Shown one piece after another: positions 49,475 through 50,071 of a stretch of 64,000 nucleotides of DNA (positions are counted from its first letter, which is position 1; each line of letters opens with the position of its first letter). The position numbers were made by a program, and so were the translations under genes. The notes beneath the pieces are model-generated. The model did not search any database. It saw nothing but the letters and a program-made list of their open reading frames with translations, and was not told the DNA's origin. The stretch covers positions 186,001-250,000 of IMG/VR virus record IMGVR_UViG_3300048591_000147; one strand, given 5' to 3'.

Positions 49475-50071
49475 ATGAACATAAACTACGAATACATTAG
49501 CAAAGCAATAGCATTCTACACGAAAAATAGATATAAGTATGTTGATGTTCCTTGGAATGTAACCAAGGATATAATAATGATGACTAAGCCACAAATTGAC
49601 TCACCCGATTATCATTTACCCATAAATGATAAGTATTTGATTGCAAGTGGTGAGCAAGGGTTTCTATATTCTATAATGAAAGGATATCTCGCCCCCGGAA
49701 GATACGTAACATGCACGCCATGCTATAGATTCGAAACACAGGATTGGCTACATCGTAAGACTTTTATGAAAGTTGAATTAATAGAATTCTCTTTTGATGT
49801 GTCAACCGACTTCACGGCTAATGAAGTAGAAGAACATGCGTACAGATTTTTCCATACATTATTACCGTTGTCTAAAGTGTCTCCAATAGTTCCAGCGGAA
49901 TCTGATAAAGGTCCATTAGATATTGTTACTCCAATGGACTGGACGCTCAACGGCGTTGAGATAGGGAGCTACGGTGTGAGGCAATATAAGAATTTAGTGA
50001 AATGGGTGTATGGTACTGGACTAGCAGAACCAAGATTCACAACTGCAAAAAATTATGACGCACCGAGATAA
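49475..50071 (+). CDS. Minimal class II aminoacyl-tRNA synthetase catalytic domain (SerRS-like)
   Basis: LIASGEQ, TPCYRFE (motif 2), FMKVEL, EIGS, GTGLAEPR (motif 3); 198 aa, no tRNA-binding arm. Confidence 0.8.
   Translation: MNINYEYISKAIAFYTKNRYKYVDVPWNVTKDIIMMTKPQIDSPDYHLPINDKYLIASGEQGFLYSIMKGYLAPGRYVTCTPCYRFETQDWLHRKTFMKVELIEFSFDVSTDFTANEVEEHAYRFFHTLLPLSKVSPIVPAESDKGPLDIVTPMDWTLNGVEIGSYGVRQYKNLVKWVYGTGLAEPRFTTAKNYDAPR

What the first reader, a model, noticed from the sequence alone, without database searches (positions are those of the whole stretch)
49475..50071. Stand-alone minimal SerRS-like catalytic domain
Seen: a 198-aa protein whose motifs parallel SerRS (LIPTAE -> LIASGE, TPCFRSE -> TPCYRFE, FDKVE -> FMKVE, EISS -> EIGS, GSGLA..R -> GTGLAEPR), without the coiled-coil tRNA arm. 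Known: truncated class II aaRS paralogs ligate amino acids to carrier proteins, EF-P or small molecules. Inference: an amino-acid ligase with an unknown acceptor (protein, nucleotide or phage tRNA), cotranscribed with the phosphoesterase and MazG-like genes.
Basis: partly seen in the sequence, partly recalled or inferred. Interest (0 to 1): 0.65.

Follow-up and report, generated by a model that had tools for sequence, protein, structure and literature searches.

The report
Phage mini-SerRS core paired with pyrophosphatase
A jumbo phage encodes a 198-residue stripped-down relative of seryl-tRNA synthetase that, in about 180 viral and metagenomic loci examined, almost always sits beside (and is sometimes fused to) a small HisE/MazG-type nucleotide pyrophosphatase, so it looks like one half of an uncharacterised two-part phage enzyme, not a tRNA synthetase as databases label it.

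Summary
ORF 49475-50071 (+) encodes a 198-aa protein that folds confidently (pLDDT 92.6) as a complete class II aaRS catalytic core. SerRS is the nearest relative by profile (E 6e-7), by structure (Z 18-20, 192 of 198 residues aligned) and as the only E. coli genome hit. There is no tRNA-binding arm in the protein or elsewhere in the 315-kb phage genome.

The gene belongs to a phage-restricted family (phrog_4806) that public records label "histidyl", "seryl", "Phe" or "Asp/Asn" tRNA synthetase, or hypothetical.

The new finding is that it is one half of a strict two-gene module. An ~80-aa HisE/MazG-like pyrophosphohydrolase lies on the same strand in 98 of 101 loci seeded with the core and in 80 of 80 reciprocal loci. 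It occurs on either side, with a median gap of 3 nt. Natural fusions exist in both domain orders.

Most likely the core makes an aminoacyl-adenylate (probably seryl-AMP) and passes it to a non-canonical acceptor, with the pyrophosphatase acting on the nucleotide side. The acceptor (nucleotide or tRNA 3' end) is unresolved, and no activity has been shown.

The parts
49475..50071 (+). Minimal class II aaRS-like core (198 aa), a member of phage family phrog_4806; SerRS is its nearest relative
49535..49555 (+). Motif 1 strand ending in the near-invariant P26-W27 (class II dimer-interface motif)
   Evidence: Alignment A1; helix 5-17 followed by a strand in the model
49637..49657 (+). LIASGEQ loop (S58, E60, Q61 invariant), equivalent to the SerRS 'TxE' loop that binds the amino group
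49715..49777 (+). Motif 2 (TPCYRFE, R85 invariant), a motif-2 loop 8 residues shorter than in E. coli SerRS, and the FMKVE strand (K99, E101 invariant)
49937..49981 (+). D155...E162-I-G-S165-Y-G-V-R169 segment: the acidic Mg-ligand pair and the 'EIGS' pocket strand
50012..50035 (+). Motif 3, GTGLAEPR (G180, T181, A184, R187 invariant)
48786..49031 (+). HisE/MazG-like all-alpha NTP pyrophosphohydrolase domain (aa 1-82 of the 227-aa upstream protein; phrog_6408), the obligate partner of the aaRS-like core
   Evidence: invariant Y3 H4 K18 E21 E22 E25 E41 D44 R79
49176..49352 (+). Lineage-specific C-terminal extension of the partner protein that resembles release-factor domain 3 but lacks GGQ
48215..48784 (+). 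Calcineurin-type phosphoesterase (phrog_547) in the same tightly packed gene string; not a conserved partner in other phages
50204..51010 (+). Downstream HD-domain protein with a weak PTH2-like C-terminus; local context only
47754..47782 (+). Best sigma-70-like promoter match (11 of 12) upstream of the gene string
   Evidence: consensus match only
50080..50103 (.). 8-bp-stem hairpin 9 nt after the aaRS-like stop codon; possible end of the transcription unit
45016..45612 (+). tRNA cluster (Ser-GCT, Met, Ser-GGA, Gln) about 4 kb upstream

Best explanation
The gene encodes the catalytic half of a phage-specific two-component enzyme. Component 1 is the 198-aa protein, a SerRS-derived class II core pared down to motifs 1-3, and probably a dimer. 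It binds ATP-Mg and a small amino acid, most probably L-serine, and forms an aminoacyl-adenylate. Component 2 is the ~80-aa HisE/MazG-type all-alpha NTP pyrophosphohydrolase encoded next to it, and in some phages on the same polypeptide. The complex has no tRNA-recognition element, its motif-2 loop is shortened, and its obligate partner belongs to a nucleotide-hydrolysing family. I therefore infer that the activated amino acid goes to a non-canonical acceptor. My first choice is a nucleotide, which would give an aminoacyl- or adenylyl-nucleotide that the pyrophosphatase trims or supplies. My second choice is the 3' end of a tRNA. Shown by computation: the fold, SerRS as nearest relative, conservation of catalytic residues, absence of the arm, the strict two-gene linkage and the fusions. 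Inferred: adenylation activity, serine as the substrate, physical complex formation in this phage, and the acceptor.
For: Fold and kinship. The AF2 model has pLDDT 92.6. SerRS fills the top VIA rows for two independent family members, at Z 17.7-20.0 and Z 18.4-20.2. The family profile hits SerRS best in PDB, at E 5.8e-7, and hits only serS in the E. coli K-12 chromosome.

Catalytic residues. Motif 2 R85, motif 3 R187, the acidic pair D155/E162 and the SerRS-equivalent pocket residues S58, E60, E101, S165 and T181 are invariant in 82 sequences that share only 34-81% identity with the window protein.

Partner linkage. A MazG-like HMM hit is present in 82 of 82 viral loci and in 98 of 101 loci once genome contigs are included. 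It is always on the same strand, downstream in 51 and upstream in 47, with a median gap of 3 nt. The reciprocal test gave 80 of 80.

Fusions. P0012 is MazG-like then aaRS-like. The opposite order occurs in L087, L088, L089, L092 and L097 and in P0126 and its relatives. Phage LMM01 ORF131 (266 aa) also extends about 83 aa past the core match, but that extension was not scanned. A natural fusion folds with pLDDT 93.9 and pTM 0.77.

Partner identity. The EExxE...ExxD acidic residues are invariant. PF01503 PRA-PH matches 34 of 38 members, one of them above the curated cut-off.

No tRNA arm. PF02403 and TIGR00414 are absent from the complete genome. The only architectures found are the core alone or the core plus the MazG-like domain.

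Nucleotide-metabolism neighbours (RNR, glutaredoxin, dNMP kinase) occur in phi92, Konradin, XM05 and RXM.
Against: No biochemical data exist for any family member. The serine assignment rests on motif equivalence, not on a modelled ligand. Known SerRS homologues (aa:CP ligases) activate Gly or Ala, and the near-invariant R169 has no SerRS counterpart. Family members individually cross Pfam cut-offs for D/K/N, F and G/H/P/S/T cores, so the subclass origin is not clean. The complex prediction for the window's two proteins gave no verdict. Several contexts point to tRNA instead of a nucleotide acceptor: YqeY next door in phi92; the RF-domain-3-like extension and the HD/PTH2-like neighbour here; placement inside the tRNA island in CcrBL9; and tRNA genes within about 4 kb in 18 of 106 loci, plus the window. 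No precedent explains why an adenylating enzyme should need a MazG-type partner.
Confidence: 0.6

Rival explanations
1. It is a genuine, extremely reduced seryl-tRNA synthetase, or another tRNA 3'-end aminoacyl ligase. It would recognise only the acceptor stem of phage or host tRNA-Ser. The MazG-like partner would clear inhibitory nucleotides or damaged 3' ends, for example alarmones or pyrophosphorylated CCA ends left by toxSAS-type defence toxins.
For: The SerRS-type active site is fully conserved. The phage has 34 tRNAs, including four tRNA-Ser isoacceptors, two of them 4 kb upstream. In CcrBL9 the pair sits inside the tRNA gene island, 2.3 kb from three tRNA-Ser genes. phi92 has a YqeY/GatB-type gene directly downstream, above the Pfam cut-off. 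In this window the partner carries an RF-domain-3-like extension, and an HD plus PTH2-like gene follows. From general knowledge, SerRS does not read the anticodon, and isolated class II cores can charge minihelices weakly.
Against: There is no variable-arm-binding coiled coil in the protein or the genome. The motif-2 loop, which contacts the acceptor stem in SerRS, is 8 residues shorter. The obligate partner is acidic (median pI about 5.1) and keeps metal-binding catalytic residues, so it is not an RNA-binding substitute for the arm. tRNA genes are nearby in only about 18% of loci, with no preference for tRNA-Ser. The tRNA-related neighbours are lineage-specific, not universal.
Confidence: 0.3
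2. It is a non-catalytic, HisZ-like regulatory or sensor subunit. It would bind an amino acid and/or ATP and so control the pyrophosphohydrolase, by analogy with HisZ-HisG or with the HisRS-like domain of GCN2.
For: HisZ is the next-best structural match after SerRS (Z 17.2-17.7). The partner is HisE-like (PF01503). The strict pairing and the fusions fit a regulator-enzyme couple.
Against: The motif 2 and motif 3 arginines, the Mg-binding acidic pair and the amino-group-binding loop are invariant. By contrast, the 2022 review states that HisZ has no adenylation activity (PMC9437257). No HisRS or HisZ sequence appears in the profile search of PDB even at E up to 10. No HisG-like gene showed up among recurrent neighbours.
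Confidence: 0.07
3. It is a protein-aminoacylating enzyme in the manner of EpmA/PoxA (EF-P) or aa:CP ligases (carrier-protein thiol). The small partner or a host protein would be the acceptor.
For: Truncated class II paralogues that lost tRNA-binding domains are known to acylate proteins (review PMC9437257). Bll0957 (3mey) is a good structural match (Z 15.0-16.2). The always-adjacent small partner has an invariant lysine, K18.
Against: No carrier-protein gene recurs in the neighbourhood. There is only one invariant Cys, so the Cys/Glu/Cys Zn site that I recall for aa:CP ligases cannot form. The partner's invariant residues form the EExxE...ExxD metal-binding signature of an enzyme, not of a passive acceptor. 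The family profile does not hit epmA in E. coli.
Confidence: 0.05

Closest known systems
Seryl-tRNA synthetase (bacterial type, TIGR00414 / PF00587 + PF02403)
   Same: It has the class II catalytic fold and is the best structural and profile match. It shares the TPC(F/Y)R motif 2, the F-x-K-V-E strand, E-I-x-S, and the G-(S/T)-G-L-A-x-x-R motif 3, with equivalents of the residues that bind ATP, Mg and serine.
   Different: It is 198 aa against about 430 aa. It lacks the N-terminal coiled-coil arm and the C-terminal tail. About 40 residues of internal insertions are trimmed, and the motif-2 loop is 8 residues shorter. It scores 16.6 bits against a 301.65-bit family cut-off. It is obligately paired with a pyrophosphohydrolase.
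Amino acid:[carrier protein] ligases (e.g. Bll0957, PDB 3mey)
   Same: They are SerRS-related class II cores that lost the tRNA-binding domain and act on a non-tRNA acceptor. They are also the nearest conceptual precedent.
   Different: They are about 290 aa, Zn-dependent, encoded next to a carrier protein, and found in bacteria. The phage family is about 190 aa, has no second conserved Cys and no carrier-protein neighbour, and has a MazG/HisE-like partner instead.
HisZ (with HisG and HisE) of histidine biosynthesis
   Same: HisZ is an aaRS-like core working in a nucleotide pathway that also contains a HisE-type pyrophosphohydrolase. It is the second-best structural match (Z about 17).
   Different: HisZ has no adenylation activity and partners with HisG. 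Here the catalytic residues are invariant, no HisG is present, and sequence similarity is to SerRS, not HisRS. The PHROG label 'histidyl tRNA synthetase' is not supported.
EpmA/PoxA/GenX and AsnA (class IIb core-only paralogues)
   Same: They are core-only class II enzymes that make an aminoacyl-adenylate and pass it to a non-tRNA nucleophile: a lysine of EF-P, or ammonia.
   Different: They are about 300-330 aa and clearly of Lys/Asp lineage. They give lower structural scores (Z 12.8-14.9) and no profile hit in E. coli. Neither has a MazG-like partner.
All-alpha NTP pyrophosphohydrolases (MazG, HisE, phage MazZ, T4 gp56), for the partner protein
   Same: The partner is a small helical protein with the EExxE...ExxD acidic signature. 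It gives Pfam PRA-PH and MazG matches. In several phages it lies among nucleotide-metabolism genes.
   Different: It forms a distinct subfamily (phrog_6408) with an invariant N-terminal G-Y-H and a C-terminal R. It was never found without the aaRS-like gene (80 of 80), and its substrate is unknown.

Membership tests
Seryl-tRNA synthetase (TIGR00414, EC 6.1.1.11) | Class II catalytic core with motifs 1, 2 and 3 | tested here: met
   Model and structure search. P26, R85 and R187 are invariant or near-invariant.
Seryl-tRNA synthetase (TIGR00414, EC 6.1.1.11) | N-terminal coiled-coil tRNA-binding arm (PF02403) | tested here: not met
   The protein starts at the motif 1 helix. PF02403 gives no hit in the whole phage genome, while the control genomes all hit.
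Seryl-tRNA synthetase (TIGR00414, EC 6.1.1.11) | Score above the curated equivalog cut-off (301.65 bits) | tested here: not met
   16.6 bits, E 0.003.
Seryl-tRNA synthetase (TIGR00414, EC 6.1.1.11) | Serine-pocket residues: the TxE loop, Glu of F-x-K-V-E, Ser of E-I-x-S, and Thr/Ser before motif 3 | tested here: met
   S58/E60, E101, S165 and T181 are invariant and align with E. coli T237/E239, E291, S358 and S391. The roles of these residues are taken from my knowledge of SerRS structures, not from a ligand model made here.
Seryl-tRNA synthetase (TIGR00414, EC 6.1.1.11) | Aminoacylation of tRNA-Ser | not testable with these tools
   Needs a biochemical assay.
phrog_4806 (labelled 'histidyl tRNA synthetase') | Full-length match to the family profile | tested here: met
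   E 6.1e-42, residues 1-191 on profile positions 3-183 of 190.
Histidyl-tRNA synthetase / HisZ | Sequence similarity to HisRS-type cores (PF13393) and a HisG partner | tested here: not met
   No HisRS or HisZ sequence appears in the profile-versus-PDB search up to E 10. No PF13393 hit. No HisG-like gene among recurrent neighbours. The only resemblance is at fold level (Z about 17).
Amino acid:[carrier protein] ligase | Adjacent carrier-protein gene and a Cys/Glu/Cys zinc site | tested here: not met
   The only universal neighbour is the MazG-like gene. C83 is the only invariant Cys.
EpmA/PoxA (EF-P lysyl ligase) | LysRS-type core of about 325 aa | tested here: not met
   The family profile hits only serS in E. 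coli K-12, which carries epmA. Structural Z is 13.3-14.1, against 18-20 for SerRS.
All-alpha NTP pyrophosphohydrolase (MazG/HisE clan), partner protein | EExxE...ExxD metal-binding signature on a small helical domain | tested here: met
   E21, E22, E25, E41 and D44 are invariant. The domain forms three helices in the fusion model.
All-alpha NTP pyrophosphohydrolase (MazG/HisE clan), partner protein | Pfam PRA-PH (PF01503) or MazG (PF03819) above the gathering score | tested here: inconclusive
   34 of 38 members match PF01503, mostly below the cut-off (best E 1.6e-4). One member is above it (22.0 against 21.3 bits). The window's own domain is not detected by Pfam. The PDB profile search gives only a non-significant MazG-like hit, 1vmg at E 0.51.
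All-alpha NTP pyrophosphohydrolase (MazG/HisE clan), partner protein | NTP to NMP + PPi hydrolysis | not testable with these tools
   Needs an enzyme assay.

The most novel reading that the evidence does not exclude
The SerRS-core plus HisE/MazG-like pair is a previously unrecognised kind of phage enzyme that works without tRNA. It would join an activated amino acid to a nucleotide, or make a dinucleoside polyphosphate, and then process the product. The resulting small molecule would serve host takeover or counter-defence. At about 190 residues the core would also be the smallest natural class II aaRS-type catalyst I know of with all three motifs.
Probability: 0.3. Interest if true: 0.85.

Novelty: new variant of a known kind. 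Interest (0 to 1): 0.62.

Why it matters
Truncated aaRS paralogues have repeatedly turned out to do unexpected chemistry, such as EF-P lysylation, carrier-protein loading and asparagine synthesis. This family is widespread in large phages: 276 phage records, including the phi92-like and Acinetobacter T4-like phages used in therapy research, and hundreds of metagenomic clusters. It is consistently mislabelled as a tRNA synthetase. Recognising it as half of an obligate, sometimes fused, module with a nucleotide pyrophosphatase turns a vague 'aaRS fragment' into a defined two-protein system that can be expressed and assayed. It also corrects the annotation. Finally, it gives a natural ~190-residue class II core for studies of how small an aaRS-type catalyst can be.

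Tried and rejected
1. Complex prediction of the window's core with its MazG-like domain returned 'no answer' (ipSAE 0.00). I do not use it as evidence either way. I left that protein out and rebuilt the alignment from protein-search hits.

2. hhalign and hmmsearch against E. coli SerRS aligned only the motif 1-2 half. The C-terminal motifs were mapped by direct reading.

3. The profile of the partner against PDB and against the E. coli chromosome gave nothing significant.

4. Fold searches of the fusion model found no solved or predicted chain spanning both domains.

5. Net charge and pI of both families are acidic, but so is E. coli SerRS, so this is uninformative about RNA binding.

6. Proximity to tRNA genes (18 of 106 loci) is too weak and unspecific to decide the acceptor.

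7. Other recurrent neighbours are lineage-specific and gave no common theme: homing endonucleases, an RNA ligase, a D12 methyltransferase, a phrog_4784 cupin-like domain and zinc ribbons.

8. Seven full-text literature searches found annotation-level mentions only.

9. Sequencing runs gave only low-depth wastewater contigs, probably DNA, so there is no evidence of expression or of a single transcript.

10. The exhaustive representative-protein search was not run. The word searches and family scans already defined the family and its architectures, and no claim here rests on an absence of relatives.

Full report
**The observation**

The window holds an ATG-initiated ORF at 49475..50071 (+) that encodes 198 aa. 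I read it beside E. coli SerRS, taken from the K-12 record.
- LIASGE (aa 55-60) matches LIPTAE.
- TPCYRFE (81-87) matches TPCFRSE.
- FMKVE (97-101) matches FDKVE.
- EIGS (162-165) matches EISS.
- GTGLAEPR (180-187) matches GSGLAVGR.

Single-sequence Pfam and NCBIfam scans give only sub-threshold class II hits: PF01409 at E 0.005, PF00587 at E 0.13 and TIGR00414 serS at E 0.003. PHROGs places the whole protein in phrog_4806, labelled 'histidyl tRNA synthetase', at E 6e-42.

**Family and fold**

A word-based search found 93 homologues of about 180-215 aa, nearly all unnamed metagenomic proteins. An alignment of 82 of them (A1) has these invariant residues: S58, E60, Q61, P82, C83, R85, K99, E101, D155, E162, G164, S165, Y166, G180, T181, A184 and R187. 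P26, W27, H93, F97 and R169 are near-invariant.

The profile finds SerRS first among solved structures (E 5.8e-7). PylRS, AspRS and PheRS follow far behind, and no HisRS appears. In the E. coli K-12 chromosome the profile's only hit lies inside serS.

AlphaFold2 on A1 gives pLDDT 92.6 and pTM 0.90. Foldseek and the exhaustive aligner both return class II synthetases. SerRS is on top at Z 17.7-20.0, with 190-192 of 198 residues aligned at 3.1 A. HisZ/HisRS follow at Z about 17, SepRS at 16.8, PylRS at 16 and the aa:CP ligase Bll0957 at 15. A second, independent family member gives the same order.

The model aligns to residues 165-397 of T. thermophilus SerRS. Relative to SerRS, the phage protein lacks three things: the N-terminal arm, about 40 residues of internal insertions, and the C-terminal tail. 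The motif-2 loop is 8 residues shorter than in E. coli SerRS.

Family members individually exceed Pfam cut-offs for PF00152, PF01409 or PF00587. The family is therefore a deep, minimal class II lineage with SerRS as nearest neighbour. It is not a recent SerRS fragment.

**What the conserved residues imply**

From established knowledge of SerRS structures, the E. coli equivalents have known roles. R268 and R397 bind ATP. E355 binds the metal. T237/E239 bind the amino group. E291 and S391 bind the serine hydroxyl. All have invariant counterparts here: R85, R187, E162, S58/E60, E101 and T181. This argues for a working adenylation site with a small polar amino acid, most likely serine. The assignment is inferred, not shown. 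SerRS-like aa:CP ligases use Gly or Ala, and the near-invariant R169 has no SerRS counterpart.

**Genome context**

The window is part of a complete 314,956-bp phage genome with terminal repeats. That genome has no full SerRS, no Seryl_tRNA_N domain and no YqeY. It has one copy each of the core and of its partner. It carries 34 tRNA genes, including four tRNA-Ser isoacceptors, two of them 4 kb upstream of the core gene.

The gene lies in a tight string:
- phosphoesterase (48215-48784, phrog_547);
- after a 1-nt gap, a 227-aa protein (48786-49469);
- after a 5-nt gap, the core (49475-50071).

A strong promoter-like site lies at 47754, and a hairpin lies 9 nt after the stop codon.

The 227-aa protein has a MazG-like N-terminal domain (phrog_6408). 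It also has a C-terminal extension that matches release-factor domain 3 (E 1e-4) but lacks GGQ. Downstream is an HD-domain protein with a weak PTH2-like tail.

**The key new result: an obligate partner**

In phi92 the homologue (gp196) follows a small protein with a predicted MazG fold (gp197) and precedes a YqeY-like gene. I fetched 80 viral loci with the core's profile and clustered all flanking ORFs. Only one neighbour family recurred: an ~85-aa protein that includes the window's and phi92's MazG-like proteins.

An HMM of that family hits all 82 loci. I then added 21 loci from about 186,000 species genomes, most of them MAG contigs, which shows the family is essentially phage-restricted. 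With these, 98 of 101 loci carry the partner. It is always on the same strand, downstream in 51 and upstream in 47. The median gap between the two domains is 3 nt.

The reverse test started from the partner and found the core in 80 of 80 loci.

Natural fusions exist in both orders:
- P0012 is MazG-like then core.
- Five single ORFs of about 270 aa from archaeal- and CPR-binned contigs are core then MazG-like.
- P0126-P0130, P0134, P0158 and P0159 have fusion-length sequences; P0126, P0158 and P0159 were read and show core then MazG-like.
- Microcystis phage LMM01 ORF131 (266 aa) extends about 83 aa past the core match, which suggests the same fusion, although I did not scan that extension.

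No other architecture was found. A natural fusion folds with pLDDT 93.9 and pTM 0.77. Its partner domain is three helices preceded by an extended segment bearing an invariant G-Y-H.

The partner keeps an invariant EExxE...ExxD acidic signature plus K18 and R79. It matches Pfam PRA-PH (HisE) in 34 of 38 members, one above the cut-off, and MazG in 6. It is therefore a catalytically competent-looking all-alpha NTP pyrophosphohydrolase. Being acidic and metal-binding, it is not an RNA-binding substitute for the SerRS arm.

**Mechanism**

Co-location in either order, reciprocity and fusion in both orders together make a strong case that the two proteins act as one enzyme. I commit to this model. 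The core forms an aminoacyl-adenylate, probably Ser-AMP. The activated group goes to a non-canonical acceptor. The pyrophosphohydrolase acts on the nucleotide side of the reaction.

I rank a nucleotide acceptor slightly ahead of a tRNA 3' end, for four reasons:
- All tRNA-recognition elements are absent.
- The motif-2 loop is shortened.
- The partner belongs to a nucleotide-hydrolysing family.
- The pair lies among RNR, glutaredoxin and dNMP-kinase genes in four lineages.

The tRNA alternative has real support, however:
- YqeY lies next door in phi92.
- The RF-domain-3-like extension and the HD/PTH2-like gene lie here.
- The pair sits inside the tRNA island of Caulobacter phage CcrBL9.
- tRNA genes lie within about 4 kb in 18 of 106 loci.

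A HisZ-like regulatory role is unlikely because the catalytic residues are invariant. An EpmA-like or aa:CP-ligase-like protein-acylation role lacks any conserved acceptor gene.

**Comparison with known systems and novelty**

A 2022 review of aaRS paralogues lists SLIMP, aa:CP ligases, PoxA, HisZ, AsnA and others (PMC9437257). It lists nothing resembling a phage core coupled to a MazG/HisE-type enzyme. Literature mentions of this gene are annotation only, for example 'SerRS' next to MazG genes in phage RXM (PMC8953757).

The protein fails the SerRS membership tests: it has no arm and scores 16.6 bits against a 301.65-bit cut-off. It also fails the HisRS/HisZ, aa:CP ligase and EpmA tests. It works like a core-only class II adenylating paralogue. 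I therefore rate it a new variant of a known kind, with a partner and a distribution that appear undescribed.

The ESM Atlas also shows separate viral clusters of ~210-235-aa HisRS-like and PylRS/PheRS-like cores. This hints that minimal class II cores are a broader phage theme.

**Limits**

No activity, substrate, acceptor or physical interaction has been measured. The complex prediction gave no verdict. The sequencing runs that hold this stretch are low-depth wastewater contigs, probably DNA. They show only that the phage occurs there.

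Noticed in passing
window 49176-49352 (aa 131-189 of ORF 48786-49469): The MazG-like partner in this phage carries a C-terminal extension homologous to domain 3 of release factors RF1/RF2 (PDB phmmer E 1e-4). The match begins just after the position of the catalytic GGQ, and no GGQ is present. This looks like a GGQ-less RF domain fused to a pyrophosphatase. It was not seen in the other loci examined.
   Followed up: partly
window 50204-51010: HD-domain protein (PF01966, above the cut-off) with an 'hDIGKP' signature that gave a weak match to the HD region of a solved 'Poly A polymerase' entry. 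It also has a weak PTH2-like (peptidyl-tRNA hydrolase) C-terminus at E 0.044. Together with the phosphoesterase at 48215-48784, this suggests a local cluster of tRNA-3'-end maintenance genes.
   Followed up: partly
G000:C1:76266-76343, 87001-87076 and 106782-106856 (same genome, outside the window): The phage's 34 tRNAs include one with a CTA anticodon (amber-suppressor type, which ARAGORN calls 'Pyl'), one called with a 2-nt anticodon, and a tRNA-Asn(ATT). I did not examine whether TAG is recoded in part of this genome.
   Followed up: no
ESM Atlas clusters: Separate, mostly viral clusters of ~210-aa HisRS-like (PF13393) and ~235-aa PylRS/PheRS-like minimal class II cores exist. Stripped-down class II cores may be a general feature of large phages, not a single family.
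   Followed up: no
L023:3184-4008, L074:4567-5433, L032:4518-5120: A domain with a 'WFGLGFIQ...H-x-H-R-Y' motif (phrog_4784, unknown function, possibly cupin-like) is fused to the N-terminus of the MazG-like partner in two loci and is a separate adjacent ORF in a third. It may be an occasional third component.
   Followed up: partly
L108:3492-4292 (Microcystis phage LMM01 ORF131, BAF36222.1): The annotated 266-aa 'hypothetical protein' covers the aaRS-like match plus about 83 further residues. If these are the MazG-like domain, as the length suggests, this would be a cultured phage carrying the natural fusion.
   Followed up: partly
window 47700-51100: Identical low-depth contig fragments occur in four wastewater metagenome runs from one study (at most three samples). 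One contig covering 50179-50955 differs at 40 of 777 positions, so a second strain appears to be present. One contig skips 67 nt at 47976-48044, in the small-ORF region.
   Followed up: no
window 5284-14622 (- strand): A single ORF of 3112 aa, followed by ORFs of 966, 520 and 600 aa on the same strand. These were not examined.
   Followed up: no
window 45946-47751 and 51385-51999: A 601-aa protein with a von Willebrand factor A domain lies directly after the tRNA cluster. A 204-aa protein with an N-terminal signal-like hydrophobic segment gives a weak CAP/SCP-family hit.
   Followed up: no
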